DNA of 64,000 bases from Schmidtea nova (taxonomy: Eukaryota): contig CM097883.1 of NCBI GenBank assembly GCA_044892505.1, forward strand, positions 77,562,001 through 77,626,000. Reading direction: 5' to 3'. A program made the translations under genes and the position numbers. The stretch's first letter is position 1. Each line of letters opens with the position of its first letter. Below the pieces are notes generated by a model. The model made no database searches, was not told where the DNA came from, and saw nothing but the letters and a program-made list of their open reading frames with translations. Shown here in pieces: positions 26,769-57,960 of this stretch.

Positions 26769-26819
26769 ATTTCACATTTATTAGTGATCACATGTGTACA
26801 ATCCAATAAAACCTTTATT

Positions 26820-27876
26820 TGTTGGGTTTTCTAATAACAAAAGATTGATCGTTGGTTACTCTGACTCCTCGTGTTCAGACAAATCAATAAACTCCGATTT
26901 TCCCAACGTATATTTGTTATCACACTTTACACTTCTCACTCACAACCAATTTCACAACAATAAATTAATAATCAAACTTTTTCTCTATTCGATCAAGCCT
27001 CGCCTCGGAAGTCTTGACCCTGTGCGATCTGAAAGTAAATATCACCTTTTAATTCCTTTATACGACTCCTTGCCTTCGATTCGATGTGTTTGACTATTTT
27101 GAATTTAATTCACTCAACTCTTTGATTCACTTTTGATATCCTTTAATTTTCTTGATCTGACTTCTTTGATTCCTTAATTTTCCACTTCTCCCAATTTCAC
27201 TTCTTCTCACAATCTCCAAAACCTATTGTCGATTTCTTCTGCCCTACCTAAGGCTAACGCCGAATTTTCTGAATTTGGAGTCTCCTTATATACTCCAATA
27301 ATCATTTTGATTACCAGCGGTTTCCTTTGATATTATGATAAAATAACTGTAATTAATCACTTCTACCGTTCCTTCATGTTATTTCCGATCTTATTTTATT
27401 TACCCTCACTTATCCTGTTGATTCCATAATAGTTCTCTAAAAGTTAAACTGTTTATTTTTCTCGATTGCCGCGCTCGGTTGTTAAAATAATGTCTCTCCA
27501 AAAGTCGTTTTGTTTGTTTTGATAATCGTTCTCCAACGTTCAGTTTGTTTATTTTCCCTAATACCCGTGCTCGAGGTTTCTTCATCTCTCGGGTTCTCCA
27601 TTGGCTCGGACTTCCCATTAGCCCGGGTTTTCCATTAGCCAATTAATTAATTAATTAATGATTTCTGTTTTAACCTTTTTTACCTATTTTCAACCCTTTC
27701 AAGACCTTTTCTGACAATTTCTTGCTCACTATCTTCTTCGCCAATCCCTGATCTACACCTATTCCGTTTTCCAGCTTCGATTTCGATTCTCTTTCATTTC
27801 GTTTCACTTCAATTTTCTTTTGATTCAAAATAATTCTAATTTAATTTAAGATAATTTTAATTTAACAACCTCAACA
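26820..27876 (-). repeat. Element 1 3' LTR
   Basis: Direct repeat of 40110-41166; only two mismatches seen by eye (about 27795 and 27867). Confidence 0.97.
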
Positions 27877-27878
27877 TA

Positions 27879-27889
27879 TCTCCCCCCTT
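27879..27889 (-). other. Polypurine tract of element 1
   Basis: Minus strand AAGGGGGGAGA, 2 nt before the 3' LTR TGTTG. Confidence 0.9.
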
Positions 27890-29108
27890 AAAAAAAATTT
27901 CGTCCTCGAAACAGATGTTTTGAAAGTTATTTTGTACTTATTTATATATACATATACTTACACACACACACACATATATATAAATATATTTTCATATTTA
28001 CATAATTTATTTTTTGATTTATTTCTAAATTTAATTATGAAAATAGTTTTTTGTTTTAAATATAATAAATTTACCATTTAAATTAATTTTATCATATTTT
28101 ATTTGATTATTTTTATTTATTATTTATTTTATACGAATTTTACATTTAAAAATTTTTTTTTTTTTTTCAATTGAATAATAAATAACATTCAGTTCTAAAT
28201 AAATTAAAATGAAAAAAATTATTCGATTCCAAAATCGAAAAATTTAATTATTTATTTACTAAAGTTATCATTTTAGATAACTCTTTAATTATTCTACTTA
28301 TAATTATTCTATATAAAGAGATATTTTTATCTCATTTTCATTTTTCTCCAATTCCCAAAAAAATGAAGGTAAGTTTTGTTATTATAGTTCTTATTTATTA
28401 TATTATTATTTATTTTATCATATTTTATATTATTTACGTTATTACTATATATATACATTATTATATTATTACTATTATTATCATAATCATTATTACTGTT
28501 TTATTATTATTATATAATAATATTATAATGCTATTATTACATTTTCTTAATAGAAAAACCGAAAATGGAAGGAAACTAACATAAAGATGCTCACAATATG
28601 GTGATATTTGAAATCCTAATTAAAACCATTTTTTCCTAAGATTGTCACGTGAACTTATCGATAATATGAATTTATTACGTGCTATCGCACTTATTTGTTT
28701 TGACTTTTATTTTGGAAGTTGTAAAAATACTTTTGAATTACAAAATATTTAATATCAAAATTAGATTTCACTGATTTAATCTATCTATTTTCCATTATAG
28801 CATTTATTAAATCACCTATATATCACTTTAAATGTGTTCATCTAGGAACGTGTGAAAATGTTTGGGATTAATTTGCACAGTCATCTGTGTTGTAAAAGCG
28901 ATGATTAATACCCATTTCATTCTAATAACTATCTGATTCCACTGACATAATTCACTCAATTCTAGTTTTACGGCAACACACATGTATACCTATATATACA
29001 TTTTTACGCATTGCCTATTTATCTATAGAAACGATATTACACTGTAGACTTATGATACTTGTACTACATATATCCCTAAGCAATTGAAATTTTTTAATAT
29101 TCGTTATT

Positions 29109-29306
29109 TTAGGCTCCTAAGTCCGAAGCATTAGTTTGGTTACCGGTCGCCCTTCCGCGACGTCGGGGCCTCAAAAGGACCTTTGGGGTTATGGAAGGCT
29201 TTGCAAAAACTCTCCGCTTTGAAAATGACCCTCCCCACGGGGTTCGGGATGACTTAGTCATCCAAAGTTTTATTATTTTGGACGACGATGATTGACTTTG
29301 ATTCAC
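29109..29306 (-). CDS. Small basic, Arg-rich accessory ORF in the element 1 3' region (hypothetical)
   Basis: KVLLRPRRRGRATG; a GC-richer island in AT-rich DNA, preceded by an AG acceptor-like site. May not be coding. Confidence 0.35.
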   Translation of the reverse strand: MNQSQSSSSKIIKLWMTKSSRTPWGGSFSKRRVFAKPSITPKVLLRPRRRGRATGNQTNASDLGA

Positions 29307-29434
29307 CTAATTCTTATTTATGGTGTTATTTATAATAAATTTGCCTTATTTTAGTTTTAGTTTTCACCATTACTATTTCAAGGACGAAAATTTAAAAAGG
29401 TTATTTCTTAATATTTTTATTACTTCTCACAGTT

Positions 29435-29677
29435 TTAGTCCAAGTTATTCATTTCTCCCTCCTCCATAGTTTCGTCTTCCTGCTCCTGTAGTTTCATTCG
29501 CCATAGAACTACCTCGGCTTCATATCTGAAAAGAAGAATTTCCATTTTTTCAAAACGTCTTTTGACCACCCAATTCTCTTGTTCCAGATCGAAAATTCGT
29601 TTCTCCATTGCCTTCATTTTTTTTCTCATCTCTTTCATGGTGTTAAGGCATTCTTTTAGTGATTCTTCTTCCTGCAT
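29435..29677 (-). CDS. 80-aa coiled-coil accessory ORF in the element 1 3' region (hypothetical)
   Basis: Heptad pattern LKECLNTMKEMRKKMKAMEKRIFDLEQEN with an acidic tail; preceded by TTTAACTTTAG acceptor-like site. Confidence 0.5.
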   Translation of the reverse strand: MQEEESLKECLNTMKEMRKKMKAMEKRIFDLEQENWVVKRRFEKMEILLFRYEAEVVLWRMKLQEQEDETMEEGEMNNLD

Positions 29678-29825
29678 TTCCTAAAGTTAAAGATAATTAA
29701 TACTTTAAATACATCTCTCCTTCCATCGCACAAGGACAGACCCTCCTCAGCAACACTCGATCAACCAAAATATTTTCATTCAGGTCACACATTCCTAATT
29801 TACTTTTAACCATACAGATTATCAA

Positions 29826-29875
<50 letters not shown>

Positions 29876-29905
29876 TATATACATGCATGCCATATAAAAT
29901 CATTG

Positions 29906-31084
29906 TCAATGATCATAGTTAGGTGTCCTTTTACATAATACGATTGTTATTATTAGAAACACTATGGATAATATGAAAAATGCTGTTATCATAAGATAGA
30001 GTAAGTATTCACAGATGATTAATGTTTGGTTCGTTTCTTTTAAAACTAGCTTGCTCATTTGAGTTCGATTAAATTTATTTCGATTCAGGGGTGGGCCCGT
30101 GGTTGCTACTATCATCTGTGTTTGATGTGTGGCTGTTAGGATCAACTCTGGCCTTTTGATCAGTTTTGTTTCTACCAAAACTGTCTGCCAACGATATGGT
30201 TTGTCCATCCACCGCTGGTATTTGATTTTTATCAGGTAATTATCTCCTACATTAGAAGTATTAAATAAAAAGTAACTTTTACCCACATCCAACAAAACGA
30301 TAATTCTTTGATTCTCACTAATAATTACTCTTTCATTGATCATTGATTTTCTGTATATTACTATCGCTTCATACTGCACTTTGAAAATCACCATATTCGA
30401 TACATTTCTTAGGTAAATACTCTGCTTTTCGGTTTTAAACAATGCCCATCTATTGCTCATTATTGTCCCGTTATCGTATAGCATATTTTCATAATAGTTT
30501 GTTAATATGGTATAATTGGCATTCATTTTTAGGTTATAATATCGAGAATACGATTTCCGTGTATTTAATATATCAACAAAGTTTTGAAATATCACTTGTG
30601 CTTTCACCCGTTCACTTGCTATCCAATACACATTTACTCCATTTAATACCGGCTCTATTTCGACTGTATGTCGTAATTCTTTTGTTTGTATTATGACTCG
30701 AATTTGACTATCAAACTTTACCGACGAATTTGTCTCATTTTGTTTTATAAACCACGGATACTTGAAGTTCGCCTTTAATTCTTGTGCCACATACATATTT
30801 CTATCGTAATTAAGAATACTGACCGGCGTGAATGGATCTAAGAGGTTGTTAATTTCTATCTGTTCCGATACCTCACAATGATAGATCCAGACAATATTCG
30901 TATACGTAGAGTATATATTGATCTTTTCCCATAAGGGTATTTTTGTCACTGCATACGGTAAATCGACCTTCCCACCCTTAACACTTGTCAGTGTTAACAG
31001 AGCAATCATTATAAACAACATTTTTGTAATGTAACTGATTGGGACTGGGTTTTTGGTAAATTTTTGTTGAACTATGGCATCCAC
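29906..31084 (-). CDS. 392-aa predicted type I membrane glycoprotein downstream of integrase
   Basis: Signal-like MLFIMIALLTLTSVKG, beta-rich ectodomain with several NxS/T sequons, C-terminal TM YLLYLMITAFFILSIVFLIITIVLC and short tail. Overlaps the integrase tail in the -1 frame. Confidence 0.8.
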   Translation of the reverse strand: MDAIVQQKFTKNPVPISYITKMLFIMIALLTLTSVKGGKVDLPYAVTKIPLWEKINIYSTYTNIVWIYHCEVSEQIEINNLLDPFTPVSILNYDRNMYVAQELKANFKYPWFIKQNETNSSVKFDSQIRVIIQTKELRHTVEIEPVLNGVNVYWIASERVKAQVIFQNFVDILNTRKSYSRYYNLKMNANYTILTNYYENMLYDNGTIMSNRWALFKTEKQSIYLRNVSNMVIFKVQYEAIVIYRKSMINERVIISENQRIIVLLDVGKSYFLFNTSNVGDNYLIKIKYQRWMDKPYRWQTVLVETKLIKRPELILTATHQTQMIVATTGPPLNRNKFNRTQMSKLVLKETNQTLIICEYLLYLMITAFFILSIVFLIITIVLCKRTPNYDH

Positions 31085-31575
31085 TTTTTCTTGGTTTGGT
31101 TTGGTTGAAGTGGATATCTTGTTTCATCGTCTTCTGGCATTAATTTGCATCGATTTGCATGAACTATTATAGGATTAGCTTTTTTACTCCTGAATGGTAG
31201 TAGTTTCAAATTTGTTTCAGTTGTGTCACATACTTTATATGGCCCTTTAAACGGTCTCTGTAATTTTGGTGACATTCCTTTGAGCGGTTCAGGTCTATTG
31301 AGATATACCAAGTCTCCAATTTTGATTCCATGTGGATGTGCTTTTTTATCATAGGCTTCTTTATACTTTTCTTGATTGTGTTTTACCGTTAAACCAGCTT
31401 TTGCCCACACAGACTGCACTCTTTCTTGCATTAATGCTTTATAGTCTGGTATTTCCATATATTGTGTTACCGGCAATTGGAAGTTTAAATCTATCGGCAT
31501 ATTATTTCTTCTTAAATACATCAAATAAAAAGGTGTCTTATTGGATTTATTGCATTTCGGTAAGCAAACAAGCAA
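31072..31575 (-). pseudogene. Frameshifted integrase C-terminus (GPY/F region)
   Basis: KTPFYLMYLR...GDLVYL...PKLQRPFKGPYKV; continues the pol frame that is lost near 31550. Confidence 0.9.
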
Positions 31576-34500
31576 GGCTTTATATATTCATCCCAATCCC
31601 TTTGCTTACTATTAACATACGAAGAAATCATATTTATCAATGTACCGTTAAATCTCTCAACTAAGCCATCGGTTTGTGGATGATAAGGAGAACTGTTCAG
31701 CTTCCAGATTCCAAATAACTCAGTAATTGATTTAAATAATTCGCTTTGAAAGTTTGAGCCCTGATCAGTTAGTAATTTTTTTGGAGTGCCATATCTAAAG
31801 ACAATATTCTCTACGAATATTTTGGCTACCGTATCGGCCTTTTGATTTGGTATGGCGTAAGCTTCCGGCCATCTCGTCAAATAATCACAGAATACTACGA
31901 TACATTTATTTCCTTTTATTGTTTCAGGTAATGGTCCCACAATGTCCATTGCAGTCATCTCCATTGGTGTAGTTGGTACAGGCATTGGTTTTAAAGGTAC
32001 TTTAATTTTATTTCCTGTATTTCTCCTTGTAATACATATTTTACATTTCTTGCACCAATCTCTCACATCTTGCTCCATTAATGGCCAATAATATTTTTGT
32101 TTTAGTCTCGATAAAGTTTTTCTAGCCGATAAGTGCCCTCCTAAAGCTCCATCGTGATATTGCATCAGTAATGAATCTCTCTGTTTTTCAGGAATTATGA
32201 TTAGTATCTCATCGTTTTTTACACATTTTAATATTCCTTCGTGAATTATATATTTGTGATTTTCATTGATTATTTGCTTTAAATTTCTCTCTCTTTCGAC
32301 TGTAATTGCTCGTTCAAACAACTGTTTAAGTTGATTGTCCTTTTTCTGTTCATTTTGTAACTCTATCATATTGTTAACGGCTTTAATTGCGGCAAATATC
32401 GTGCCTTCAATCGTTTCTGTACTACCTTCACTTTCAATGCCTCCATTGGGAATTCTAGACATTGTATCGGCATTTGCATTAGCTTTCCCTGCTCTGTATT
32501 TAATTTCGAAATCATACTCTTGAAGAGCTATTGACCACCTAATTAATTTACTAGCTGAATCTCTATGCTTCATCAACCATTGAAGAGGATTGTGATCAGT
32601 GTATACGATAAATTTCCGTCCCAGCAAGTATTGAATAAACGTAGCGATTCCGTAAACTAACGCTAAGGTTTCTTTTTCAATTGTTGAATAATTTTTTTCA
32701 TGTGGTCTCAGTGACCTGCTTGCATACGCTATCACGTGATCCTTTTCCCCATCTACCTTCTGACCCAACACTGCGCCCAATGCAACGTTACTGGCATCCG
32801 TCATTAACAAGAACAATTTTGTAAAATCTGGGCATCGCAAAATAGGTGTCGTTATTAATTTTTGCTTCAGTGCGTCAAAAGCTTCTTGTTGAGTTTTGTT
32901 CCATATGAACTTGTTATTCTTCTTCAATAATGAATTTAACGGTTGAGCTATATGCGAGAAATTCTTTATAAACTTTCTATAATAGCTTGCTAATCCTAAG
33001 AATTGCCTCACATCATCCGCATTCTTTGGAATTGGATACACCTCCACCTTTTTAATGTTGTCAGGATTTGTTTGTAGACCTCGTCTTGATATTATGTGAC
33101 CAACATACACCACTTCGGACTTTCCCCATTCACACTTCGATGGTTTTATTTTCAATTTTGCTCCTTTTAGTCGTTTAAATACTGCCTCAACATCATCAAG
33201 ATGTTCATCAAAGCTATTTGAAAATATAATAATATCATCAATATAAACTAACGCGTGTTTTAAGCCTCTTAATACAAAATTCATACCTCTTTGAAATGTA
33301 GCCGGGGCTCCCGTCAAACCGAACGGTAGAACATTGAACTCATATAACCCTTTGCCATCTGAAAAGGCTGTCTTCTTTCTATCCTCTTCCTTGACTTTAA
33401 ATTGATTATACCCTTTATTCAAATCAATCACAGTAAAATATTGAGCTTCTCCCATCTGATCGAACATTTCCTGGGGTACAGGAATTGGATATGTATCCTT
33501 TCTTGTTACCTGGTTCAGTTTTCTGTAATCCACACAAAATCGTAAATCTCCGTCTTTTTTCTTTACAATTACAATGGACGCCGAAAACGGTGATGAGCTA
33601 TCTCTGATTATTCCAAAATCTTTCATTGCTTGAATTTGTCGATCACTTTCGGTTTGATGAATATATGGTATTCTGTACGGTTTTATTTTCACCGGGGTTT
33701 CATCCAACAACGAAATTTCATGTTCAATTATATTTGTTAACCCCAAGTCATATTCGTGTCTCGCAAAAATATCCCGGTATCTCTTCAACAATTCTGTAAA
33801 CTTTTGCCTTTGCTCTTCGGTCAAATCAGTACTTACTACTTCAGGTTCTTTATAAATTTTTACGTTTCTAGGAATCTTCCTTTCCGCTTCTATCAACATA
33901 TTAGACAATTTTCCTAGTTTCGTCTTTGGTTTTAGCCGAATTGACTTGTCACCATAATTAGCTATTCGCACTGGTAATAATTGATTTTCCACTTTCACAA
34001 TTTCGTCACACATCGGGGTCTCGTATTTTTCTATTAACTTTTGATTCGGTTCAAATATAAATTCATCATCGTCTACGCCAGCAGCGTTCGCATAATATAT
34101 TATTTCTGTTTGAGGTGGGATGGTTAACGATTGACTGAGAAATACTTCTCCTAAATTATGAATGACTTCGCCACTTTTTCCCACGATCAAATTTTTAGTT
34201 TTAAAATCCAGTAAAATTCCGTCTAACTGCTCCAGTACATCCATTCCAATCAAACACAATACAGGGCTTTTTTCCATAATCTGTACGTTATGTGTAATCT
34301 TTCTGTCACCAATTAGAAGTACCACTTCTATTTCTCCAATTATTCTCAATACGTTTTTAGACAGTGATCTGATTATGCTATTTGATGGTTTTATTTGTCT
34401 TTTTTCCTTTGCCGACAATATCTCTTCTGATATAATTGTATGACTTGATCCTGAATCCACCACAGCCTCCACTCTCTTTTTATTTAGTTGGATTAATATT

Positions 34501-35708
34501 CGTGGTTGTTTGCCAATTTTTGCTAACGTCATCAATACATAATTTCCGGGTAAACCTAACCTGTTTCGTCTTTCGATTTCGGCACTTGTTGGTTCGATTC
34601 TCTCACATTGTAAAGCAATATTTTCGACTGGTTTCATTTCCCTCAATTTTTCGACTGGATATGCTGGTAGTGGTTGGATAAACGATTTTGGTATACACAA
34701 TCTAGAAAAGGTATCCTGATTATCATTATTGGACAGCGATTCTTTTAGCAGTTGATAGTTTTTCAATGTGTTACTTTGCATTCGTTCCTCCGAGTATAAC
34801 GGGGCGGATTCATTGATATTTTCGTCATCATTTTTGTCATCGTTAGAAGTAGTAGTCAAATCGATATAACTTACCTTTTTCTTTTTCATCAGTCGTGTTT
34901 TCAAAGTTTCCATCTCTTTATACTGGTGATGTGTGATAAAAAATCTGGCTAGCAATGGAACGCATCCCATGACTAATTTCCAAGACAATCCCGTAATAGT
35001 ATACAATCTGTGTGTTGACAACACCTGCGAGATTATTACTTTAATCACGATTCCTATTACGTAGATTCCGATTAATCCAGCACAAGCTTGACCAATAAAC
35101 ATGAACTTTCCCCATATCTTTTTCATCGTATTATATGTTGCTCTTTTGTAATGATCAGGTGTTAACAAGTAGTCGTAATTTGCTTTCCCAGTTCCACTCG
35201 GGAGAATCGTGTTCACCATTTCCATAATCACCCTTTCTTTTTTTGATGGAAATAATAAATTTCTCCGGGCCGCTTCAATATCATCACTTGAATACATCCC
35301 ACTTTGCGTCATACTATCTAGCGATGTAAAATTAATCAAATACTCTAATTTGGTCAACTCCAATTTCTCTGGAACTTTCACTCCTCTGTAATCGGGTAGT
35401 GCAATCCATGATTCAGACATCAAGCGATACAGTGGAGCCAATAATCTATTACATTGCAACACTTTGGGCTTCACGCCCTCTTCCAGTAGAATGCGTGTCA
35501 CCGGTTCCATGAATCGCAATTTCTCGTTAAAATTCACTGGCAATTCATTTGTACATTGATCGAATTTCATCAATTTGATAGGTACAGCTTTGCATTTATA
35601 GCTATACAACGCTTCGCCAAAAATTCGAGCAAATACTCCGTTCTCTGATATTAGCATTGGAGCAACTAAATTCGGATTTGTAATAGCCATCGCCATTCTG
35701 TTTCGCAA
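31521..35708 (-). CDS. pol: Glycoprotein C-terminal half + TM, fused in frame to PR-RT-RNaseH-integrase
   Basis: CTNELPV ectodomain motif, hydrophobic segments at about 34930-35115, PR VVDSGS (about 34455), RT YIDD (about 33240), RH TDAS, INT zinc finger (H..GHL..C..C), MDIVGPLP / LTDQG / VERFN. Confidence 0.95.
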   Translation of the reverse strand: MRNRMAMAITNPNLVAPMLISENGVFARIFGEALYSYKCKAVPIKLMKFDQCTNELPVNFNEKLRFMEPVTRILLEEGVKPKVLQCNRLLAPLYRLMSESWIALPDYRGVKVPEKLELTKLEYLINFTSLDSMTQSGMYSSDDIEAARRNLLFPSKKERVIMEMVNTILPSGTGKANYDYLLTPDHYKRATYNTMKKIWGKFMFIGQACAGLIGIYVIGIVIKVIISQVLSTHRLYTITGLSWKLVMGCVPLLARFFITHHQYKEMETLKTRLMKKKKVSYIDLTTTSNDDKNDDENINESAPLYSEERMQSNTLKNYQLLKESLSNNDNQDTFSRLCIPKSFIQPLPAYPVEKLREMKPVENIALQCERIEPTSAEIERRNRLGLPGNYVLMTLAKIGKQPRILIQLNKKRVEAVVDSGSSHTIISEEILSAKEKRQIKPSNSIIRSLSKNVLRIIGEIEVVLLIGDRKITHNVQIMEKSPVLCLIGMDVLEQLDGILLDFKTKNLIVGKSGEVIHNLGEVFLSQSLTIPPQTEIIYYANAAGVDDDEFIFEPNQKLIEKYETPMCDEIVKVENQLLPVRIANYGDKSIRLKPKTKLGKLSNMLIEAERKIPRNVKIYKEPEVVSTDLTEEQRQKFTELLKRYRDIFARHEYDLGLTNIIEHEISLLDETPVKIKPYRIPYIHQTESDRQIQAMKDFGIIRDSSSPFSASIVIVKKKDGDLRFCVDYRKLNQVTRKDTYPIPVPQEMFDQMGEAQYFTVIDLNKGYNQFKVKEEDRKKTAFSDGKGLYEFNVLPFGLTGAPATFQRGMNFVLRGLKHALVYIDDIIIFSNSFDEHLDDVEAVFKRLKGAKLKIKPSKCEWGKSEVVYVGHIISRRGLQTNPDNIKKVEVYPIPKNADDVRQFLGLASYYRKFIKNFSHIAQPLNSLLKKNNKFIWNKTQQEAFDALKQKLITTPILRCPDFTKLFLLMTDASNVALGAVLGQKVDGEKDHVIAYASRSLRPHEKNYSTIEKETLALVYGIATFIQYLLGRKFIVYTDHNPLQWLMKHRDSASKLIRWSIALQEYDFEIKYRAGKANANADTMSRIPNGGIESEGSTETIEGTIFAAIKAVNNMIELQNEQKKDNQLKQLFERAITVERERNLKQIINENHKYIIHEGILKCVKNDEILIIIPEKQRDSLLMQYHDGALGGHLSARKTLSRLKQKYYWPLMEQDVRDWCKKCKICITRRNTGNKIKVPLKPMPVPTTPMEMTAMDIVGPLPETIKGNKCIVVFCDYLTRWPEAYAIPNQKADTVAKIFVENIVFRYGTPKKLLTDQGSNFQSELFKSITELFGIWKLNSSPYHPQTDGLVERFNGTLINMISSYVNSKQRDWDEYIKPCLFAYRNAINPIRHLFI

Positions 35709-35711
35709 AAT

Positions 35712-37925
35712 TTACTTATTTAACTTGCAATCATTTAATATAATTTCTCGATACACACTTTCAACCGTATCTTGGCTAAAATGAAACAGATAATCAATTT
35801 TGTTATTGAAATAATTCGTTAGTTTAATTTCCTCTGAATATAACTTCGTTTGAGCTTCCTCGACAATTCTTTTTGATACGTAAATTCCTTTATAATTTGT
35901 TTCATATACTGTTTGTCCACACTTGGTATTTATACCTTTTCTGAGAAATCTCATCCCATCATTCGGGGATATTGCCATTAATACCGTTGGAGTATCCTTC
36001 ATTCGCAAAGGAGTAATTCTAATCGTTGTATTCATCACTGAATTTAGAATTGTACTTTCTGGTCTCTCTTGAATTTGCTCTCCTGTTATCTCTTTGAAAG
36101 GCATCGATTTTAAATGCGCTAAGTTACACTTTTTCACATTCACGTCGTACACTAAAATTGATTCACCTGTATTACAACTGGTTTCTCTCATATTGCAAAA
36201 TGGATGCGTTTGTAATTTTCCCGTGTCATCATCGAACGATCCATCAAAATATCTCAATTCTGATTCGTACTCTTCTATAACAACGACTTTATCAATAACC
36301 TGTTCACCCACCTTGTGCGATTCACCTTCGCAATCACCATTTGCTTTGATCACCCCTTTTATTGCAATTGTTTCGCGAATTTTGTGATTCAATTTCGCTT
36401 TTAACTTAATTTCCGCATTTATTTTTAATTCTCCTGTTTGAAACGCAGCTAAACAGTTTTCGCGAGTTATCTCAATTACTCTAGGGATTGAATGCATTTT
36501 TATTAACGACGAATGACTCCATTTGCCACAATAAAATGTAAATGTGGTCCTTTTTGCCGTACATTCTCTCACTTTTACTCGTCTAAATCCTGATTCTTGA
36601 TAAACATGATATTTCATCTCACTTGCCCATTTTAAATTTCTCGGATATGCATCCAGACATTCAGCTACATCTACTAGCGAGTATACTTTTCCCATTTCTG
36701 TTTGAGAACAATCATAAGCTACCAATGACGTTGTAGTATTGATAAATCCTAATATTATGATAATAAACATAGATACCCATGGAACTATCATTTTCCCTTT
36801 TTTTGGCTCATACACCCTTTCCAAATTTTCTGGTTTTGGTGTCAAATTTTTCCATCCACCATTACCCTTGATCCAACTATTCACATACGTATTTACCACT
36901 TTTGCTGCTTGTTCAATCCACTTTTCCGATTCATCAGATTCCAGCCAACTGTAGATACCAATTTCGAAAACAATATAAGCAAGGACTGATAATACCACAT
37001 CTTTATTCAAACCGTTTTTAATTAGCTCTTTGATTACTGTTTCGTCGCAAAATATGTCTTCTTTACTAATATTTTTAAGTGCTACAGGAAGTCGTCCTTT
37101 CAGTTCTCTGGCAAGTTGTTGTATGAATTCATCGTTACATATATTCTTTTCATCCAGTGCATATAATTCCGATGCCAACCCTTTAAGAATTAATTTTGTT
37201 TGCTTTACCTCATTTAAGTCTAATTTTTCCACATCACTGGACTCCGTTTTATCTAGATCGTTTAGTTCCTCTTTATTGTTTAACTTGTATTTTCTTCGCT
37301 TCCGGTTGTTCGATTGACCACCGTCTTCTGTTTCTACAAAATTCGATTCGCATTTCATTCTCTCTGCAATTAACATCTCTTCAATTACATTGCTAATCTC
37401 TTGATTTACTGCACAAATTTTATCTGCTTCATTACTAATATTCTCGTTTTGCACTTCACTCAAATCTGTTTGTTTTGATTCGCACTCGTCACACTCGGCT
37501 TCTCTTGGTTCCTCCGTTAATTTGCTTTTGTAATTTTCACACTCGTTTTCGTTCGGTTCCTCAGATAATTCTGTTTTGATCACAGTATTGTTATCATCTT
37601 CTTTTACGATAAAGGGCCAATGAGTTCCATCCTCATAAATATTCATTTGTGTTGTGGCATAGACATTATTTATATAGTTCGGGCTGCCTCCGCAATTGAC
37701 AAAATATTCGTCATCATCTAATTCCACTCCTTTGAAAATCAGTATGATGATTCCATCGGTGCCCAATGTTTCTGCAGCTTTCCGTCGTAATTTCGCCACC
37801 TTTATGCTCCAGTGCTCTTGTAGGTATTCTACTTTTCCATTCATATTTAGAGCTATTACTAAGGATTTTGAAGTATGATCTGATACTCGGTAACCATGAC
37901 CTAGCATTCGTATTACTTCCTTCAA
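35712..37925 (-). CDS. Ubiquitin-like + acidic linker + Bcl-2-like + signal/TM + chuvirus-G-like glycoprotein N-half
   Basis: LIFKGVELDD (Ubl); ELIKNGLN...WIKGNGGW (BH1/BH2-like); hydrophobic MIVPWVSMFIIIILGFI; VAYDC..YSLVDVAEC glycoprotein start. In frame with gag (one TAA at 37989-37991) and with pol (one TAA at 35712-35714). Confidence 0.85.
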   Translation of the reverse strand: MKEVIRMLGHGYRVSDHTSKSLVIALNMNGKVEYLQEHWSIKVAKLRRKAAETLGTDGIIILIFKGVELDDDEYFVNCGGSPNYINNVYATTQMNIYEDGTHWPFIVKEDDNNTVIKTELSEEPNENECENYKSKLTEEPREAECDECESKQTDLSEVQNENISNEADKICAVNQEISNVIEEMLIAERMKCESNFVETEDGGQSNNRKRRKYKLNNKEELNDLDKTESSDVEKLDLNEVKQTKLILKGLASELYALDEKNICNDEFIQQLARELKGRLPVALKNISKEDIFCDETVIKELIKNGLNKDVVLSVLAYIVFEIGIYSWLESDESEKWIEQAAKVVNTYVNSWIKGNGGWKNLTPKPENLERVYEPKKGKMIVPWVSMFIIIILGFINTTTSLVAYDCSQTEMGKVYSLVDVAECLDAYPRNLKWASEMKYHVYQESGFRRVKVRECTAKRTTFTFYCGKWSHSSLIKMHSIPRVIEITRENCLAAFQTGELKINAEIKLKAKLNHKIRETIAIKGVIKANGDCEGESHKVGEQVIDKVVVIEEYESELRYFDGSFDDDTGKLQTHPFCNMRETSCNTGESILVYDVNVKKCNLAHLKSMPFKEITGEQIQERPESTILNSVMNTTIRITPLRMKDTPTVLMAISPNDGMRFLRKGINTKCGQTVYETNYKGIYVSKRIVEEAQTKLYSEEIKLTNYFNNKIDYLFHFSQDTVESVYREIILNDCKLNK

Positions 37926-37988
37926 TTTAACTTGATAGTTTGTTGTTTTATGAATATAAGGTAAAATATTTTCAAATAATTGTTCTTT

Positions 37989-39929
37989 TTATTTTTGATC
38001 AATTTCTGAATTCATTATATAATCAAGGCATTTATTAATTTCATCTTCATCTCCGACATATAGCATATCTCGCAGATCCTGTAATTTTTTCTCCCAACTT
38101 TTATCAGCTAAATTTGAATAATTATTGACATTTAAAATTTTTACCTCGTTTTTATATCCAGGAATTAGACCATAATCGACCAAGAATTCCTCATCCGCTA
38201 ATTGACCAATTTGACGTTGTATAAATTTTATTTGTACTTCATTTCCTTGGTATTTTGACATAATAAGCTTTCTCAAATCTTTTATCTGCCCATCTGGTTT
38301 AATAGAAAAGTGAAATTTTACGTCATCTCCATCGGTGGTTTCTACAAAAATATCAGGCAGACCTTTTGTCAATCTCAAAGCTTTTCCAAATATTTTCATC
38401 AGTTTGGCAATTTCATCATCTTGAGATTTATTGTAGAACTTTGAACATAAATTTAAAATATTTTTCAACTTTCTTTGGCTGAGTTGCATTTGAGATAGTT
38501 CGCTAATCCACTCTTTCAATTTTGGATTATTTGTTTCCATCCTCGTATACCATCTTTCTATTTTATTTATCAATAATATAGCTTTTTCGTTTGACAAGTC
38601 GTTTTTCGCTTTATCTCCAAGACTTTCTTTTTCATCGGTTTCTTTTTCGTACACCATACAAGAATCAATTTCCTCATCTGATTCGAATTTTGACATTAGT
38701 TTGTTTAATTTCTGTCTCATTTCCCGGAATTCATTTTCCATTTTCTCCTTAAACTCGTCCTTTTGAGCATAGGCTACATTAGCGTTGGATGATTCATCCT
38801 GAAATCTAATAGATCTCTTCAGTATTGGTCTGCTGAATCTTTCTGCATTCTTTGGGCATGATCGAGCCATGTGGCCATAACCTTTGCATGAATGACATTG
38901 AATTTGTCCATTTGTATTTACTTTATCTCGTTGCGGTGACGGAGATGTTGATGGTGATCGATTTTTAGAAAAGCAATTTCTGCTAATGTGACTCGTTTTC
39001 CCACATCGATAACATTCCAAGTTGCTATTGTTTGGTTTGTTTTCCACAAATATTCTTTTAGGACTACTATTTCTGCCATATTTGAACCAACATTGGTTCG
39101 AATAATGTCCGATTTTTTTGCAGTGCTCGCATACGACACTATTTGATCTCTCGGTTAGCTGGCTACCAAAAGCTGCTTTGTTAGTTTCTATCTTAGTACC
39201 TAATCTGGGAGAACTGATTGTTTGGATTGGTCTCTTGGATTCCCATTGATTTCTGACAGGTGTTATCGACCTTTCTCTCCTTTCAACATTTGCTGCGAAT
39301 GCTTCAGATTTTCTGGTGCTTTTTAAATTCAGTTCAATTTTCATTGCTTTCTTCACAAGTTCATCAAAATTTGCAAAATCTACATAACACAATGCCTTCT
39401 TTATTTCGGGATGAGCTCCAGTTATGAATTGATCTTGAAGCAGTTCTTTAACCTGCTTCACCATATCAACTTGCTCAGGCTTTGCTTCAAAGGCTTTATC
39501 TGCTAAAGTATTTAGATGATATGCAAACTCACTTACCGATTCCGTTGGATTTTGAACTCTGTTGTAAAATCTCTGTCGCATTATCCTTTTGATATCTCCA
39601 CCTACCAATTTCGTTGCCATTGCATCCTTCAATTTGGCCCAATCATTTCCAACTGTCCTTTTGTCCACTTGTTGCCAAGCTTCTCTTGCGGCTCCCTTTA
39701 AGTATAACGGAAATCTTTGTACCATTATTGCTTGTGACCATCCATAAGCTGCGGCATACATATAATAATCTCCCATGAAGTCTGCAAACTCAACCGGATC
39801 TCCACCATACTGATTCACCGGTAATTTTTGACAGCTTGCAAAATCAATCATCTCTCTATTGAGAGGCATAACAGCATTATCATTTGCCATTTGTGTTTGT
39901 TTCATACTTCTGAGGTTATATCGACTCAC
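37989..39929 (-). CDS. gag: Gag (capsid + 3 CCHC zinc knuckles) with a C-terminal ubiquitin-like extension
   Basis: Retrotransposon capsid motifs (FPLYLKGAAREAW, QNPTESVSEFA); CEHCKKIGHYSNQC, CYRCGKTSHISRNC, CHSCKGYGHMARSC; IFVETTDG...QLADEEFLVDYGL. The track start is GTG; first ATG at 39905. Confidence 0.93.
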   Translation of the reverse strand: MSRYNLRSMKQTQMANDNAVMPLNREMIDFASCQKLPVNQYGGDPVEFADFMGDYYMYAAAYGWSQAIMVQRFPLYLKGAAREAWQQVDKRTVGNDWAKLKDAMATKLVGGDIKRIMRQRFYNRVQNPTESVSEFAYHLNTLADKAFEAKPEQVDMVKQVKELLQDQFITGAHPEIKKALCYVDFANFDELVKKAMKIELNLKSTRKSEAFAANVERRERSITPVRNQWESKRPIQTISSPRLGTKIETNKAAFGSQLTERSNSVVCEHCKKIGHYSNQCWFKYGRNSSPKRIFVENKPNNSNLECYRCGKTSHISRNCFSKNRSPSTSPSPQRDKVNTNGQIQCHSCKGYGHMARSCPKNAERFSRPILKRSIRFQDESSNANVAYAQKDEFKEKMENEFREMRQKLNKLMSKFESDEEIDSCMVYEKETDEKESLGDKAKNDLSNEKAILLINKIERWYTRMETNNPKLKEWISELSQMQLSQRKLKNILNLCSKFYNKSQDDEIAKLMKIFGKALRLTKGLPDIFVETTDGDDVKFHFSIKPDGQIKDLRKLIMSKYQGNEVQIKFIQRQIGQLADEEFLVDYGLIPGYKNEVKILNVNNYSNLADKSWEKKLQDLRDMLYVGDEDEINKCLDYIMNSEIDQK

Positions 39930-40083
39930 TTTGATCTAAAATTCAAAATAAAAACAAATTAAATTTACTTGTCCTCAGCCAACTTTCAAACTTTCAAACT
40001 CAACTTCAAATTTTCAATACTTCTCTATCAACTTTATATCGAGTCGCAAATATCTATTTTCAATAATCTTTCACCAACGTTAG

Positions 40084-40101
40084 ATCACGTCGGGCTCACC
40101 A
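40084..40101 (-). other. Primer-binding site, tRNA-Trp type
   Basis: TGGTGAGCCCGACGTGAT; differs at one position from the complement of the common tRNA-Trp 3' end (TGGTGACCCCGACGTGAT). Starts 8 nt from the LTR. Confidence 0.85.
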
Positions 40102-40109
40102 ATAATATA

Positions 40110-41166
40110 TGTTGGGTTTTCTAATAACAAAAGATTGATCGTTGGTTACTCTGACTCCTCGTGTTCAGACAAATCAATAAACTCCGATTTTCCCAACGTA
40201 TATTTGTTATCACACTTTACACTTCTCACTCACAACCAATTTCACAACAATAAATTAATAATCAAACTTTTTCTCTATTCGATCAAGCCTCGCCTCGGAA
40301 GTCTTGACCCTGTGCGATCTGAAAGTAAATATCACCTTTTAATTCCTTTATACGACTCCTTGCCTTCGATTCGATGTGTTTGACTATTTTGAATTTAATT
40401 CACTCAACTCTTTGATTCACTTTTGATATCCTTTAATTTTCTTGATCTGACTTCTTTGATTCCTTAATTTTCCACTTCTCCCAATTTCACTTCTTCTCAC
40501 AATCTCCAAAACCTATTGTCGATTTCTTCTGCCCTACCTAAGGCTAACGCCGAATTTTCTGAATTTGGAGTCTCCTTATATACTCCAATAATCATTTTGA
40601 TTACCAGCGGTTTCCTTTGATATTATGATAAAATAACTGTAATTAATCACTTCTACCGTTCCTTCATGTTATTTCCGATCTTATTTTATTTACCCTCACT
40701 TATCCTGTTGATTCCATAATAGTTCTCTAAAAGTTAAACTGTTTATTTTTCTCGATTGCCGCGCTCGGTTGTTAAAATAATGTCTCTCCAAAAGTCGTTT
40801 TGTTTGTTTTGATAATCGTTCTCCAACGTTCAGTTTGTTTATTTTCCCTAATACCCGTGCTCGAGGTTTCTTCATCTCTCGGGTTCTCCATTGGCTCGGA
40901 CTTCCCATTAGCCCGGGTTTTCCATTAGCCAATTAATTAATTAATTAATGATTTCTGTTTTAACCTTTTTTACCTATTTTCAACCCTTTCAAGACCTTTT
41001 CTGACAATTTCTTGCTCACTATCTTCTTCGCCAATCCCTGATCTACACCTATTCCGTTTTCCAGCTTCGATTTCGATTCTCTTTCGTTTCGTTTCACTTC
41101 AATTTTCTTTTGATTCAAAATAATTCTAATTTAATTTAAGATAATTTTAATTTAACCACCTCAACA
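40110..41166 (-). repeat. Element 1 5' LTR
   Basis: Direct repeat of 26820-27876, TGTTG...CAACA. Confidence 0.97.
40575..40583 (-). promoter_or_regulatory. TATA box in the element 1 5' LTR
   Basis: GTATATAAG on the minus strand; the same motif sits at equivalent positions in the solo LTR (11033) and the element 2 LTR (54291). Confidence 0.6.
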
Positions 41167-41645
41167 TATTTACCCTAGTAAAATTAATTAAAAAATTTCA
41201 AAATGCATGTAGATATTGCATTTTGTATGTTTATTTTAGGAATAAATAATTTTATCATCAAAGCCTCACAATTCACATGTTCATAATAATTTTTAAAACC
41301 CCGATAAAGTATTTTGAAATTGGAAATATAAATGGTCTTTTTGCAAGTCTTCTTATGCTCAATAATTTTACTCTTCTCTTGAACTCGTGTACAGGGATGA
41401 CATGCAGTCTCTCCAATGTATGTGACATTACACTCATTACAAATAAGGATGTTAATATCGTTTTTTGGCAAACCGATTATCGTTTCAATAAAACCGACTT
41501 TAAACCGATTATTGTTTTTATCGTCATAGAAAAATATAATTATTTGTATTTAGGGCTTTGAGTATTTTGCCGCTTGAATGAGCAGTGGGTCACCTACTCG
41601 ATAAAAAAATATTCGTATATTAAAAAAGTAAATAAGTCAAATAAG

Positions 41646-57008: not shown

Positions 57009-57471
57009 CTTCGTTTTTGATTGGTATCGAATTGATTTCTTGATATATTGATTTGAGAGATGATTAATAAGGTTTTGACGGTTTAACAGAGATATAATTG
57101 AATATATTGAGATATATGGGTAATTGTCGTAACGATTCGATTGGTCTATAGAATTGACGAGATTGATTGGGTATTTTGTATAGAGATAATTAGTAGGGTT
57201 TTTTGATTGTTTGTTGTGACAGTTTAAAAAAGAGATGATTGTATTTATTGAGATTTTTGAATGGTTGTCGCAATGATTTGATTGGTGTGTAGAATTCACG
57301 AGATTGATTGGGTTTTCGGAGTTTGTTGGAACTTGCTTTGTTTTGCTCGTGTATTCTTTTCTAAAAATAAAGGATAAAGTTTTTTGTTTAAGGCGTATTG
57401 TCGGTTTAACCTTATACGCTATATAAATACGAATATATATGATTTTAATTATTATTATTGACCAAAACGTA

Positions 57472-57960
57472 TTATACCAATGTGGATTTTGTATATTCAC
57501 CTGGTATATATTTGCCCAAATGGAAATACCCTGGTACATTTCTGACCAGTCGGCTCCGATACCGCTGCCTTTTCCGTTTGTACTTTTTATAAATATGTAC
57601 GCTAGTTATTAAAGCTAAAACTGCTAATGCTATTATTGATGTTGTGATGACATAATAAGGCCAATGTGGCTTTTTATCCTCTTTACGAAATGCTTGTAAT
57701 TCCTCTAAGTTATGTATCACTATTGGTCTTCCTTGCCTTATTTTGATAGGTTCTTGTTTTTGTTTTTTGGCATTATATTGTTTTTGGAATTTGGCTATTC
57801 CAGTGCTTGTTGGTATTTCGTTTGTATGTGGTGTGGTATTTAGTATATTATCTGATGTCGTTGTTGTGCTTTTTATTCTATCGAGTGTTTTTGTTATGTT
57901 ATGATTTTTTGTTATATTCTTGGGTAATTGTTCTGTTTTTATTTTTTTTGCATCTCCATG
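57472..57960 (-). pseudogene. Frameshifted stalk + TM + basic tail of the post-integrase membrane protein
   Basis: Thr-rich stalk in a shifted frame (KSTTTTSDNILNTTPHT), then PHWPYYVITTSIIALAVLALITSVHIY-KKYKRKRQR. Confidence 0.7.

What the first reader, a model, noticed from the sequence alone, without database searches (positions are those of the whole stretch)
34930..36726. Chuvirus-G-like (putative class III) fusion glycoprotein captured by a Gypsy-type element
Seen: about 600 aa, Cys-rich, starting VAYDC..YSLVDVAEC after a signal-like segment and ending in hydrophobic helices. Conserved blocks are shared with element 2 (HVYQES, FC.....C.TGES, KCG....TNY.GIY, YFNNKID, CTNELPV), while linkers diverge. 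Established: an AYDC...SL.DV..C N-terminus typifies chuvirus-like glycoproteins, reported as captured envelopes mainly in arthropod BEL/Pao elements. Inference: an independent capture by a Ty3/Gypsy lineage, maintained by selection.
Basis: partly seen in the sequence, partly recalled or inferred. Interest (0 to 1): 0.82.

Follow-up and report, generated by a model that had tools for sequence, protein, structure and literature searches.

The report
Gypsy retroelement with chuvirus-like envelope gene
Two diverged Ty3/Gypsy retroelements in this window carry a chuvirus-type class III fusion glycoprotein between gag and pol, in pol's reading frame and preceded by ubiquitin-like and Bcl-2-like domains; the envelope capture is already published, the extra domains and single-frame layout were not found in the papers read.

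Summary
Window 36726-34930 encodes about 600 residues of a type I membrane glycoprotein. It matches Pfam PF24664 (Monjiviricetes fusion glycoprotein) at 1e-32 to 1e-86. Its model matches chuvirus-like glycoproteins (1e-30) and herpesvirus gB (4e-10).

It lies inside a young 14.3-kb Ty3/Gypsy element, window 26820-41166, with 1057-bp LTRs (1055/1057 identical) and target duplication AATA. A second, 37% identical copy runs off the window end.

- The gene sits between gag and pol, in pol's frame, not 3' of pol.
- The element 1 copy carries one in-frame stop.
- A ubiquitin-like and a Bcl-2-like domain precede it.
- Each element has a further, variable ORF3; element 2's holds an ISG20-like exonuclease domain.

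Eight metagenomic relatives are consistent with this order. One has gag, glycoprotein and protease in a single open frame.

Gypsy elements with chuvirus-like glycoproteins, and the gag-env-pol order, are already published (Chary & Hayashi, eLife 2026). "Independent capture" is untested. The envelope is therefore a new member of a known kind; the Gag-UBL-Bcl-2-like-G-Pol single-frame design appears to be a new variant. The host was not identified.

The parts
26820..41166 (-). Element 1: complete LTR retroelement, 14,347 bp, flanked by 4-bp target-site duplication AATA (41167-41170 and 26816-26819)
40110..41166 (-). Element 1 5' LTR, 1057 bp, TG...CA ends
   Evidence: 1055/1057 identical to the 3' LTR, no gaps
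40083..40101 (-). Putative tRNA primer-binding site, starts TGG, 8 nt after the 5' LTR
   Evidence: read from sequence; tRNA type not identified
37989..39929 (-). Element 1 gag: capsid-type Retrotrans_gag domain, three CCHC knuckles, long C-terminal extension with a weak second UBL-like stretch
36792..37925 (-). Element 1 'X' region, same frame as gag and as the glycoprotein: UBL domain, acidic linker, Bcl-2-like domain
37647..37868 (-). Ubiquitin-like (beta-grasp) domain
   Evidence: pLDDT about 85 here; ubiquitin/ISG15/SUMO, target TM 0.78-0.84, rmsd 1.5-2.2 A; relatives with sub-threshold Pfam ubiquitin hits
36852..37112 (-). Bcl-2-like domain ending in a BH2-type W-x4-GGW motif
   Evidence: PF00452 E 0.037, profile 5-100/100; profile vs PDB 6.9e-5; 1.7e-6, 91 Bcl-xL/Bcl-2 sequences; 3 of 5 relatives hit PF00452, best 7.5e-5; motif shared with relatives. 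Not confirmed by the structure model
36726..36791 (-). Hydrophobic segment with a small-residue c-region directly before the conserved start of the mature glycoprotein: signal peptide, possibly also membrane anchor of the Bcl-2-like domain
   Evidence: same layout in four relatives and element 2
34930..36791 (-). Element 1 glycoprotein G (chuvirus-like, class III type), signal to end of hydrophobic C-terminal region. Broken: one in-frame stop
31072..34511 (-). Element 1 pol: protease, RT, RNase H, integrase, in the same frame as G. Broken: one frameshift, in the integrase part
29906..31084 (-). Element 1 ORF3, 392 aa, signal-like N-end and C-terminal transmembrane segment, 8 N-x-S/T sites, no detectable relatives
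27879..27889 (-). Polypurine tract just upstream of the 3' LTR
26820..27876 (-). Element 1 3' LTR, 1057 bp
55035..64000 (-). Element 2 (partial; its 5' part lies beyond the window end, its 3' LTR was not located)
61970..63883 (-). Element 2 glycoprotein G, uninterrupted: signal (63883-63818), ectodomain, transmembrane segment, tail. Preceded at 63884-64000 by the end of a BH2-type motif and a linker
   Evidence: (PF24664 1.5e-86)
57899..61735 (-). Element 2 pol (protease to integrase), same frame as G. Broken: one in-frame stop, in RT
55035..57539 (-). Element 2 ORF3, 834 aa, with an ISG20/REXO-like DEDDh exonuclease domain at about 56040-56297
   Evidence: profile vs ISG20 8.3e-14

Best explanation
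The region encodes the envelope-type fusion glycoprotein of an errantivirus-like Ty3/Gypsy retroelement with the non-canonical order gag - env - pol.

Shown:
- The protein is a full-length member of the Monjiviricetes (chuvirus-type) fusion glycoprotein family.
- It has a signal peptide, a disulfide-rich ectodomain and one strong transmembrane segment.
- It lies inside LTR-bounded Gypsy elements, in the reading frame of protease-RT-RNase H-integrase.
- The same order recurs in diverged relatives.

Inferred:
- The element is built as one long frame: Gag - UBL - Bcl-2-like - signal - G - TM - Pol.
- The internal hydrophobic segment takes the G ectodomain into the ER lumen and is cut by signal peptidase. 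This would leave the Bcl-2-like domain membrane-anchored on the cytosolic side, as cellular Bcl-2 proteins are.
- The single TM returns the chain to the cytosol, so Pol stays cytosolic and is freed by the element's protease.
- G would then coat budding particles and mediate membrane fusion for cell-to-cell or germline entry. The UBL may help budding and the Bcl-2-like domain may keep the producing cell alive.

Element 1 itself is a very recent insertion but not coding-intact: G has one stop, pol has one frameshift, and there is a stop at the gag/X junction that may be a true terminator.
For: - Family: PF24664 at 1.5e-32 and 1.4e-48 (two pieces, element 1) and 1.5e-86 (element 2), covering profile positions 6-638 of 653.
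- Fold: Foldseek top 50 PDB hits are all herpesvirus gB, E 4e-10 to 5e-7. BFVD top hits are Tacheng tick virus 4, chu-like, qin-related and xinmo-type glycoproteins, E 1e-30 to 1e-25 over about 650 columns.
- Topology: one signal-like and one strong TM segment.
- Constraint: 14 Cys columns invariant in all rows that cover them, at 25-49% identity.
- Gypsy context: LTRs, TSD, PBS and PPT; Retrotrans_gag, CCHC, RVP, RVT_1, RT_RNaseH_2, Integrase_H2C2 and rve; named relatives are Ty3-I and transposon 412.
- Single frame: 2802 codons with 2 stops in element 1, 2033 codons with 1 stop in element 2.
- Relatives: L005 has gag + G + protease in one open 1615-aa frame. P0010 has G + PR + RT + RH + IN in one 1694-aa protein. 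L003 has the G end and PR in one ORF. P0128/L007 has Gag-UBL-Bcl-2-like followed by G.
- Signal-peptidase-type c-regions sit directly before the conserved mature N-terminus in the elements where that junction was aligned: element 1, element 2, L002, L003 and L004.
- Literature: gag-env-pol Gypsy elements with class III env, and gypsy elements with chuvirus-like glycoprotein (PMC13524379).
Against: - The G model is poor overall (mean pLDDT 55, pTM 0.38; only residues 60-235 are confident). Global TM-scores to gB are 0.13-0.22, so the fold match rests on local 3Di similarity.
- No trimer, fusion loops or activity were examined.
- Several copies, element 1 included, are interrupted, so this locus itself is probably not functional.
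- Polyprotein versus spliced subgenomic expression is unresolved. Element 1, L002 and L004 have a Met at the start of the signal, element 2 has none.
- A weaker second hydrophobic stretch after the TM leaves the topology of the tail uncertain.
- In L001 and L004 the protease ORF overlaps the end of G in another frame.
- The Bcl-2-like call is below Pfam's threshold and was not confirmed structurally.
Confidence: 0.72

Rival explanations
1. The glycoprotein is made from its own spliced subgenomic message, starting at the Met in front of the signal. The continuous frame with gag and pol is only compact gene packing. In that case the Bcl-2-like domain and G are separate products, and Pol is made as a G-Pol or separate protein.
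For: A Met sits at the start of the signal segment in element 1, L002 and L004. env genes of retroviruses and Drosophila errantiviruses are expressed by splicing (general knowledge). In L007 a stop separates the Bcl-2-like domain from G.
Against: Element 2 has no Met between the Bcl-2-like motif and the mature N-terminus. L005 keeps gag, G and protease in one open frame, and P0010 keeps G through integrase in one protein. Pol has no start of its own downstream of G.
Confidence: 0.3
2. The glycoprotein is retained for a role other than particle entry. It could be a membrane tether that brings Gag and Pol to ER or plasma membranes, or a cell-cell fusogen, without enveloped infectious particles.
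For: The fusion to Pol places Pol at the membrane. No late-domain motifs were found in gag. There are very few N-glycosylation sites in the ectodomain.
Against: The full ectodomain is conserved with all 14 Cys columns, and the whole viral family profile is covered. That is more than a tether needs.
Confidence: 0.12
3. The glycoprotein is an ordinary endogenous fragment of an RNA virus that lies next to or inside Gypsy sequence by chance, nested insertion or misassembly. It is not a gene of the element.
For: Dezordi et al. 2023 (PMC10084718) found many chuvirus glycoprotein fragments merely flanked by fragmentary Gypsy sequence, with no clear capture.
Against: The gene lies between gag and pol within one LTR pair, in the same frame as both. 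It does so in two elements 37% identical to each other and in eight metagenomic relatives with the same order. No other chuvirus genes are present.
Confidence: 0.02

Closest known systems
GAG-ENV-POL Ty3/gypsy 'errantiviruses' with class III (HSV gB-type) ENV in Nematoda, Bryozoa and Platyhelminthes (Chary & Hayashi, eLife 2026, PMC13524379; first noted in nematodes by Sacco et al. 2022, as cited there)
   Same: Ty3/Gypsy pol. The envelope gene sits between gag and pol. Class III-type glycoprotein with a conserved cysteine framework. Young copies with near-identical LTRs.
   Different: In full-text word searches, that paper contains none of the words fused, frameshift, in-frame, polyprotein or Bcl. 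It allowed gaps of up to 2 kb between ENV and POL. Here G is in pol's frame, a UBL and a Bcl-2-like domain sit between Gag and G, and a variable ORF3 follows pol. Whether this host belongs to one of those phyla is unknown.
Gypsy elements carrying the chuvirus-like glycoprotein in Coleoptera, Hymenoptera, Polyneoptera and Hexanauplia (114 elements; Methods of PMC13524379)
   Same: The same glycoprotein family (chuvirus-like, gB-like fold) next to Gypsy pol.
   Different: That passage does not state their ORF order, so whether it is the canonical gag-pol-env is my assumption.
Anakin: mosquito BEL/Pao elements with a chuvirus-derived glycoprotein (Dezordi et al. 2020, PMC7642597)
   Same: An LTR retroelement that carries a Jingchuvirales-type glycoprotein as env.
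   Different: It belongs to a different superfamily. No BEL/Pao-type Pfam families match here. Whether the glycoprotein lies downstream of pol in Anakin is my assumption, not read from the paper. No UBL or Bcl-2-like module is reported.
Glycoproteins of exogenous Jingchuvirales and related Monjiviricetes (e.g. Tacheng tick virus 4, chu-like viruses of thrips and earwigs, Wenling crustacean virus 14)
   Same: Same Pfam family (PF24664). Best predicted-structure matches, full length, E down to 1.4e-30.
   Different: Only 16-21% identity to the element's G, against 36-49% among the retroelement copies. Those are genes of RNA virus genomes, not fused to a polymerase.
Viral and cellular Bcl-2 family proteins (Bcl-xL, Bcl-2; vBcl-2 of herpesviruses and poxviruses)
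   Same: Profile similarity over the BH1-BH2 part, a BH2-type W-x4-GGW motif, a central hydrophobic helix, and a hydrophobic segment at the C-terminal side.
   Different: It is embedded in a retroelement polyprotein. The BH1 NWGR signature is not kept (alignment). The match is below Pfam's threshold. The hydrophobic segment doubles as the signal peptide of the next protein. I found no report of a retroelement-encoded Bcl-2 homologue; the library is not exhaustive.

Membership tests
Pfam PF24664 Monjiviricetes_fusion (chuvirus-type fusion glycoprotein) | Profile match above the curated threshold over most of the profile | tested here: met
   Element 2: 291 bits (cut-off 27), two stretches reaching profile position 638 of 653. 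Element 1 pieces: 113 and 166 bits, profile 6-208 and 346-636.
Pfam PF24664 Monjiviricetes_fusion (chuvirus-type fusion glycoprotein) | Type I membrane glycoprotein: N-terminal signal, large ectodomain, C-terminal TM | tested here: met
   Hydropathy shows one signal-like and one strong TM segment in both copies. Small-residue c-regions sit before the mature N-terminus.
Pfam PF24664 Monjiviricetes_fusion (chuvirus-type fusion glycoprotein) | Closest structural neighbours are Jingchuvirales-type glycoproteins | tested here: met
   BFVD Foldseek top hits, E 1.4e-30 to 1e-26. Caveat: model mean pLDDT is 55.
Class III viral fusion proteins (gB, rhabdovirus G, gp64) | Shared fold of the ectodomain | tested here: inconclusive
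   Top 50 PDB Foldseek hits are all gB, E 4e-10 to 5e-7, probability 1.00. But TM-scores are 0.13-0.22 and the model is low-confidence outside residues 60-235.
Class III viral fusion proteins (gB, rhabdovirus G, gp64) | Trimer with central helical bundle and bipartite internal fusion loops; membrane fusion activity | not tested
   No multimer prediction was available. Activity cannot be read from sequence.
Ty3/Gypsy (Metaviridae) LTR retroelements | LTRs with TG...CA ends, short target duplication, PBS and PPT | tested here: met
   1057-bp LTRs, 99.8% identical, TSD AATA, PBS starting TGG, purine tract before the 3' LTR.
Ty3/Gypsy (Metaviridae) LTR retroelements | Pol order PR-RT-RH-IN with Gypsy-type domains; relatives named as Gypsy | tested here: met
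   RVP, RVT_1, RT_RNaseH_2, Integrase_H2C2, rve and Retrotrans_gag. Named relatives are Ty3-I and transposon 412; chromodomain-bearing elements at about 38%.
Ty3/Gypsy (Metaviridae) LTR retroelements | Placement within Gypsy in an RT phylogeny | not tested
   No reference set could be brought in without typing sequences.
BEL/Pao (Anakin-type) | BEL/Pao-type protease and gag families (Peptidase_A17, DUF1758/1759) | tested here: not met
   No such Pfam family among the hits for gag or pol of either element.
Bcl-2 family | Match to the Bcl-2 domain profile | tested here: inconclusive
   PF00452 covers profile 4-100/100 but at 15-16 bits (cut-off 31.4). Three of five relatives hit singly, best 7.5e-5. 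A profile of five relatives against PDB gives Bcl-xL at 1.7e-6; the best 60 of 91 sequences at E <= 0.01 (the ones listed) are all Bcl-xL or Bcl-2.
Bcl-2 family | BH2 motif and BH1 motif | tested here: inconclusive
   BH2-type W-x4-GGW is invariant in GGW across six elements. The BH1 NWGR signature is not conserved in the alignment.
Bcl-2 family | Helical-bundle fold | tested here: inconclusive
   The model shows seven helices in the region, but pLDDT is 40-80 and no Bcl-2 chain is among the top 50 Foldseek hits.
Ubiquitin-like (beta-grasp) domains | Fold match to ubiquitin, ISG15 or SUMO | tested here: met
   Target TM 0.78-0.84, rmsd 1.5-2.2 A over 75-85 residues, pLDDT about 85. Pfam ubiquitin is sub-threshold in relatives P0128 and L004.

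The most novel reading that the evidence does not exclude
A lineage of enveloped Ty3/Gypsy elements translates Gag, a ubiquitin-like domain, its own Bcl-2-family apoptosis regulator, a class III fusogen and Pol as one membrane-threading polyprotein. The tail anchor of the Bcl-2-like protein is at the same time the signal peptide of the glycoprotein. This would be the first retroelement-encoded Bcl-2 homologue and the first Env-Pol translational fusion. Interchangeable accessory genes, such as an ISG20-like exonuclease, sit in ORF3.
Probability: 0.4. Interest if true: 0.8.

Novelty: new variant of a known kind. Interest (0 to 1): 0.6.

Why it matters
The envelope capture itself adds one more case to a picture already drawn for metazoan Gypsy elements. 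What would matter is the layout.

- An envelope protein translated in one frame with polymerase implies a way of delivering Pol to budding sites through the membrane protein rather than only through Gag.
- A Bcl-2-like and a ubiquitin-like domain inside a retroelement polyprotein would show that retroelements, like large DNA viruses, pick up host cell-death and ubiquitin-system modules.
- This gives a concrete, testable case for how retrotransposons acquire virus-like life styles.

The very low identity to exogenous chuvirus glycoproteins (16-21%), against 36-49% among the elements, also argues that the association is old rather than a recent arthropod-style capture.

Tried and rejected
- **Host identification failed.** Exact-protein look-ups of gag and of element 2's ORF3 found no record. 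There are no Rfam families or tRNA genes in the window. The closest relatives all come from unnamed metagenome contigs.
- **Word-index searches with G** found only 4 and then 6 relatives, none named. They could not link the protein to named viruses. Pfam and BFVD did.
- **PDB sequence search with G** found nothing.
- **dN/dS between the two elements** is uninformative: pS is 0.73 and 0.80, saturated; pN/pS of about 0.5-0.57 is only a crude bound. My pol comparison in that script aligned only 30 codons and is void.
I resent it with window sequences and search-returned proteins only.
- **The large protein search with X** gave 5 hits, all but one in the UBL part. None covered the Bcl-2-like part at E <= 0.001.
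- **The AF2 model of X** did not confirm the Bcl-2 fold.
- **ORF3 as a conserved second envelope gene** is rejected. The two ORF3s are unrelated, and element 2's has no TM segment.
- **The supplement of the eLife paper** is not held, so I could not match PBS type or species.
- **A chance EVE next to Gypsy** is rejected on architecture.

Full report
**1. What is at the coordinates**

The finding lies on the minus strand. From 36726 down to 34930 there are 599 codons. They begin right after a hydrophobic segment (36791-36726) and end after one strong transmembrane segment. The two copies align over their whole length at 36-38% identity with few gaps (E 1e-77 and 9e-70 by piece, 4e-139 by tblastn). 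The element 1 copy carries one in-frame stop, so I searched its two pieces apart throughout and never joined them. The element 2 copy (61970-63883) is uninterrupted and served as the query for structure work.

**2. What the protein is**

- *Family.* Pfam places it in PF24664, Monjiviricetes_fusion. Element 2 scores 291 bits against a cut-off of 27, with matches reaching profile position 638 of 653. The element 1 pieces score 113 and 166 bits. There is also a weak bornavirus G hit.
- *Solved structures.* Nothing in the PDB is similar by sequence.
- *Model quality.* An AlphaFold2 model from a nine-row alignment is poor overall (mean pLDDT 55, pTM 0.38). It is confident for residues 60-235, which form long beta hairpins.
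- *Fold search, PDB.* The top 50 chains are all herpesvirus gB (E 4e-10 to 5e-7). Global TM-scores are low, 0.13-0.22.
- *Fold search, BFVD.* Against predicted viral structures the top hits are chuvirus-type and related glycoproteins: Tacheng tick virus 4 at 1.4e-30, then thrips chu-like viruses, a dermapteran chu-related virus, Wenling crustacean virus 14, xinmo-type, rhabdo-like viruses, nyavirus and gB.
- *Constraint.* Fourteen cysteine columns are invariant in every row that covers them, at 25-49% identity.

So 'chuvirus-like' is a tested family membership. 'Class III' is supported by consistent local structural similarity, but not by a good global model.

**3. The element around it**

Element 1 is a complete LTR retroelement, window 26820-41166, 14,347 bp. 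It has 1057-bp LTRs that differ at 2 positions, TG...CA ends, a 4-bp target duplication AATA, a PBS starting TGG and a purine tract before the 3' LTR.

- gag has a Retrotrans_gag domain and three CCHC knuckles.
- pol has RVP, RVT_1, RT_RNaseH_2, Integrase_H2C2 and rve, in that order.
- No BEL/Pao-type family matches.
- Named pol relatives are Ty3-I and transposon 412 types.

Element 2 (55035 to the window end) has the same parts and is cut by the window. Ty3/Gypsy is therefore supported, though I built no RT tree.

**4. The gene is not where an env gene usually is**

It lies between gag and pol, in the same reading frame as both.

- In element 1 one frame runs 2802 codons, from the gag start to near the end of pol, with only two in-frame stops. 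One is at the end of gag and one is inside G. There is also one frameshift in the integrase part.
- In element 2 one frame runs 2033 codons from the window edge through integrase, with one in-frame stop, in RT.

Eight relatives were recovered from metagenome contigs: L001 to L007, plus the fragments P0003, P0125 and P0126. Those long enough to show an order are consistent with the same one.

- L005 has Retrotrans_gag, a full-length G (1.3e-93) and protease in a single open 1615-aa frame.
- P0010 has G, PR, RT, RH and IN in one 1694-aa protein.
- L003 has the end of G and PR in one ORF.
- L002 has gag, a long spacer, the Bcl-2-like domain and the start of G in one ORF.
- L007 has Gag-UBL-Bcl-2-like in one 997-aa protein, followed by G.
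- In L001 and L004 the protease ORF overlaps the end of G in another frame.

**5. What precedes the glycoprotein**

The 378 residues between gag and the signal (36792-37925) hold two domains.

*Ubiquitin-like domain.* The first 90 residues fold confidently (pLDDT about 85) as a beta-grasp domain. It superposes on ubiquitin, ISG15 and SUMO at target TM 0.78-0.84 and rmsd 1.5-2.2 A. The only relatives in the 1.84-billion-protein library match this part. One of them, a gag protein, has a sub-threshold Pfam ubiquitin hit at that spot.

*Bcl-2-like domain.*
- The last 90 residues match Pfam Bcl-2 over the whole profile, but below threshold (E 0.014-0.037).
- Three of five relatives hit PF00452 singly, best 7.5e-5.
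- A profile of five relatives finds Bcl-xL and Bcl-2 chains in the PDB: best E 6.9e-5, then 1.7e-6 after adding P0128. The listed best hits in both searches are all Bcl-xL or Bcl-2.
- A BH2-type W-x4-GGW motif is invariant in GGW in element 1, element 2, L002, L003, L004 and P0128.
- It was not found upstream of G in L001 or L005.
- The structure model did not confirm the helical bundle, and the BH1 signature is not kept.

I call it Bcl-2-like with moderate confidence.

*The junction with G.* Directly after the Bcl-2-like domain comes the hydrophobic segment. Its c-region has small residues at -1 and -3, immediately before the conserved mature N-terminus of G, in the five elements where that junction was aligned: elements 1 and 2, L002, L003 and L004.

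**6. How it most likely works**

Shown: the family, the topology elements, the single frame, and its recurrence in relatives.

Inferred:
- The element is designed as one polyprotein that threads the ER membrane.
- Gag, the UBL and the Bcl-2-like domain stay cytosolic.
- The internal signal takes the G ectodomain into the lumen and is cut by signal peptidase. This would leave the Bcl-2-like domain tail-anchored.
- The TM brings the chain back, so Pol is cytosolic and is released by the protease.
- G would then serve as the fusogen of enveloped particles.
- The UBL may stand in for a late domain. None of the usual motifs is in gag, and ubiquitin fused to Gag is known to rescue budding (my knowledge, not tested).
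- The Bcl-2-like domain may protect the producing cell.

The main rival for expression is a spliced message starting at the Met in front of the signal. That Met is present in element 1, L002 and L004 but absent in element 2. I cannot decide between the two from DNA.

**7. ORF3**

Both elements have a further ORF after pol, but the two are unrelated.
- Element 1's ORF3 (29906-31084) has a signal-like start and a C-terminal TM, and no relatives.
- Element 2's ORF3 (55035-57539) shares a 135-residue block with ORF3 of L005. A profile of the two matches ISG20 at 8.3e-14. Element 2's copy appears to lack the first acidic motif that L005 keeps (alignment).

ORF3 is thus a variable accessory slot, not a second conserved envelope gene.

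**8. Compared with what is known**

- Dezordi et al. 2020 (PMC7642597) described Anakin, a BEL/Pao element with a chuvirus glycoprotein. Their 2023 survey (PMC10084718) saw Gypsy fragments near such genes but no clear Gypsy capture.
- Chary & Hayashi (PMC13524379; preprint 2023, eLife 2026) report envelope-carrying Gypsy elements across metazoans. They describe a GAG-ENV-POL order with gB-type ENV in Nematoda, Bryozoa and Platyhelminthes, and 114 gypsy elements with the chuvirus-like glycoprotein in four arthropod groups.
- Their text does not contain the words fused, frameshift, in-frame, polyprotein or Bcl.
- I found no paper on a retroelement-encoded Bcl-2 homologue. That is absence in one library, not proof.

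'Independent capture' remains untested. The low identity to viral glycoproteins (16-21%), against 36-49% among elements, points to an old association.

**9. State of the copies (counts only)**

- Element 1: G has one in-frame stop. pol has one frameshift. One stop lies at the gag/X junction. It may be a genuine terminator, but relatives read through that junction in one ORF.
- Element 2: G is intact and pol has one in-frame stop.
- Among relatives, G is uninterrupted in L001, L004 and L005. It is interrupted once each in L002, L003 and L006.

**10. Limits and conduct**

- The host was not identified.
- The window holds five N runs (1095 N), none inside the elements. I left them as they are.
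- No contig looked human.
- I did not scan the viral contig collection with G or fetch any exogenous chuvirus, because that would fetch animal-virus genomes.
- A local profile HMM of the Bcl-2-like region was built only to search the fetched loci. Its consensus was not used.
- The pol line of the script is void: only 30 codons aligned.

Noticed in passing
window 55035-57539 (-), domain about 56040-56297; L005 8952-10646: ORF3 of element 2 and of relative L005 share an ISG20/REXO-like DEDDh 3'-5' exonuclease domain (profile vs ISG20 8.3e-14). Element 2's copy seems to lack the first acidic motif that L005 keeps.
   Followed up: partly
window 29906-31084 (-): ORF3 of element 1 is a different, orphan protein: signal-like N-end, C-terminal transmembrane segment, 8 N-x-S/T sites, no Pfam, PDB or intra-window relative.
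   Followed up: partly
window 50486-54270 (+): A third Gypsy-type pol ORF (PR-RT-RH-IN, 1109 aa, no glycoprotein) lies between two perfect 131-nt direct repeats. It sits just 3' of element 2 and may have displaced or interrupted that element's 3' LTR, which I could not locate.
   Followed up: partly
window 37992-38450 (-): The C-terminal extension of gag has a second stretch weakly similar to the UBL domain (pairwise E 0.003). This suggests a tandem, ISG15-like pair of UBLs across the gag/X junction.
   Followed up: partly
L004 8221-10032 and 6252-8150: A relative carries ankyrin repeats (Ank_2, 1.7e-9) and several protease-like copies between G and RT, so the space between G and RT also accepts extra modules.
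   Followed up: no
window 20181-20927 (-): DDE_3 (Tc1/mariner-type) transposase ORF, 248 aa (6.6e-26).
   Followed up: no
window 42000-42970 (-): Two ORFs just outside the 5' LTR of element 1 have no Pfam hit. By eye they resemble a transposase fragment, unverified.
   Followed up: no
window 8063-8242, 21565-21704, 26332-26556, 43896-44056, 47724-48112: Five N runs (1095 N in all). The large 'repeat family' reported by the repeat finder around them is an artefact of the Ns. They were left unfilled.
   Followed up: no
window 27877-29905 (-): About 2 kb of AT-rich, low-complexity, non-coding sequence with TA and TTA microsatellites lies between ORF3 and the 3' LTR of element 1.
   Followed up: partly
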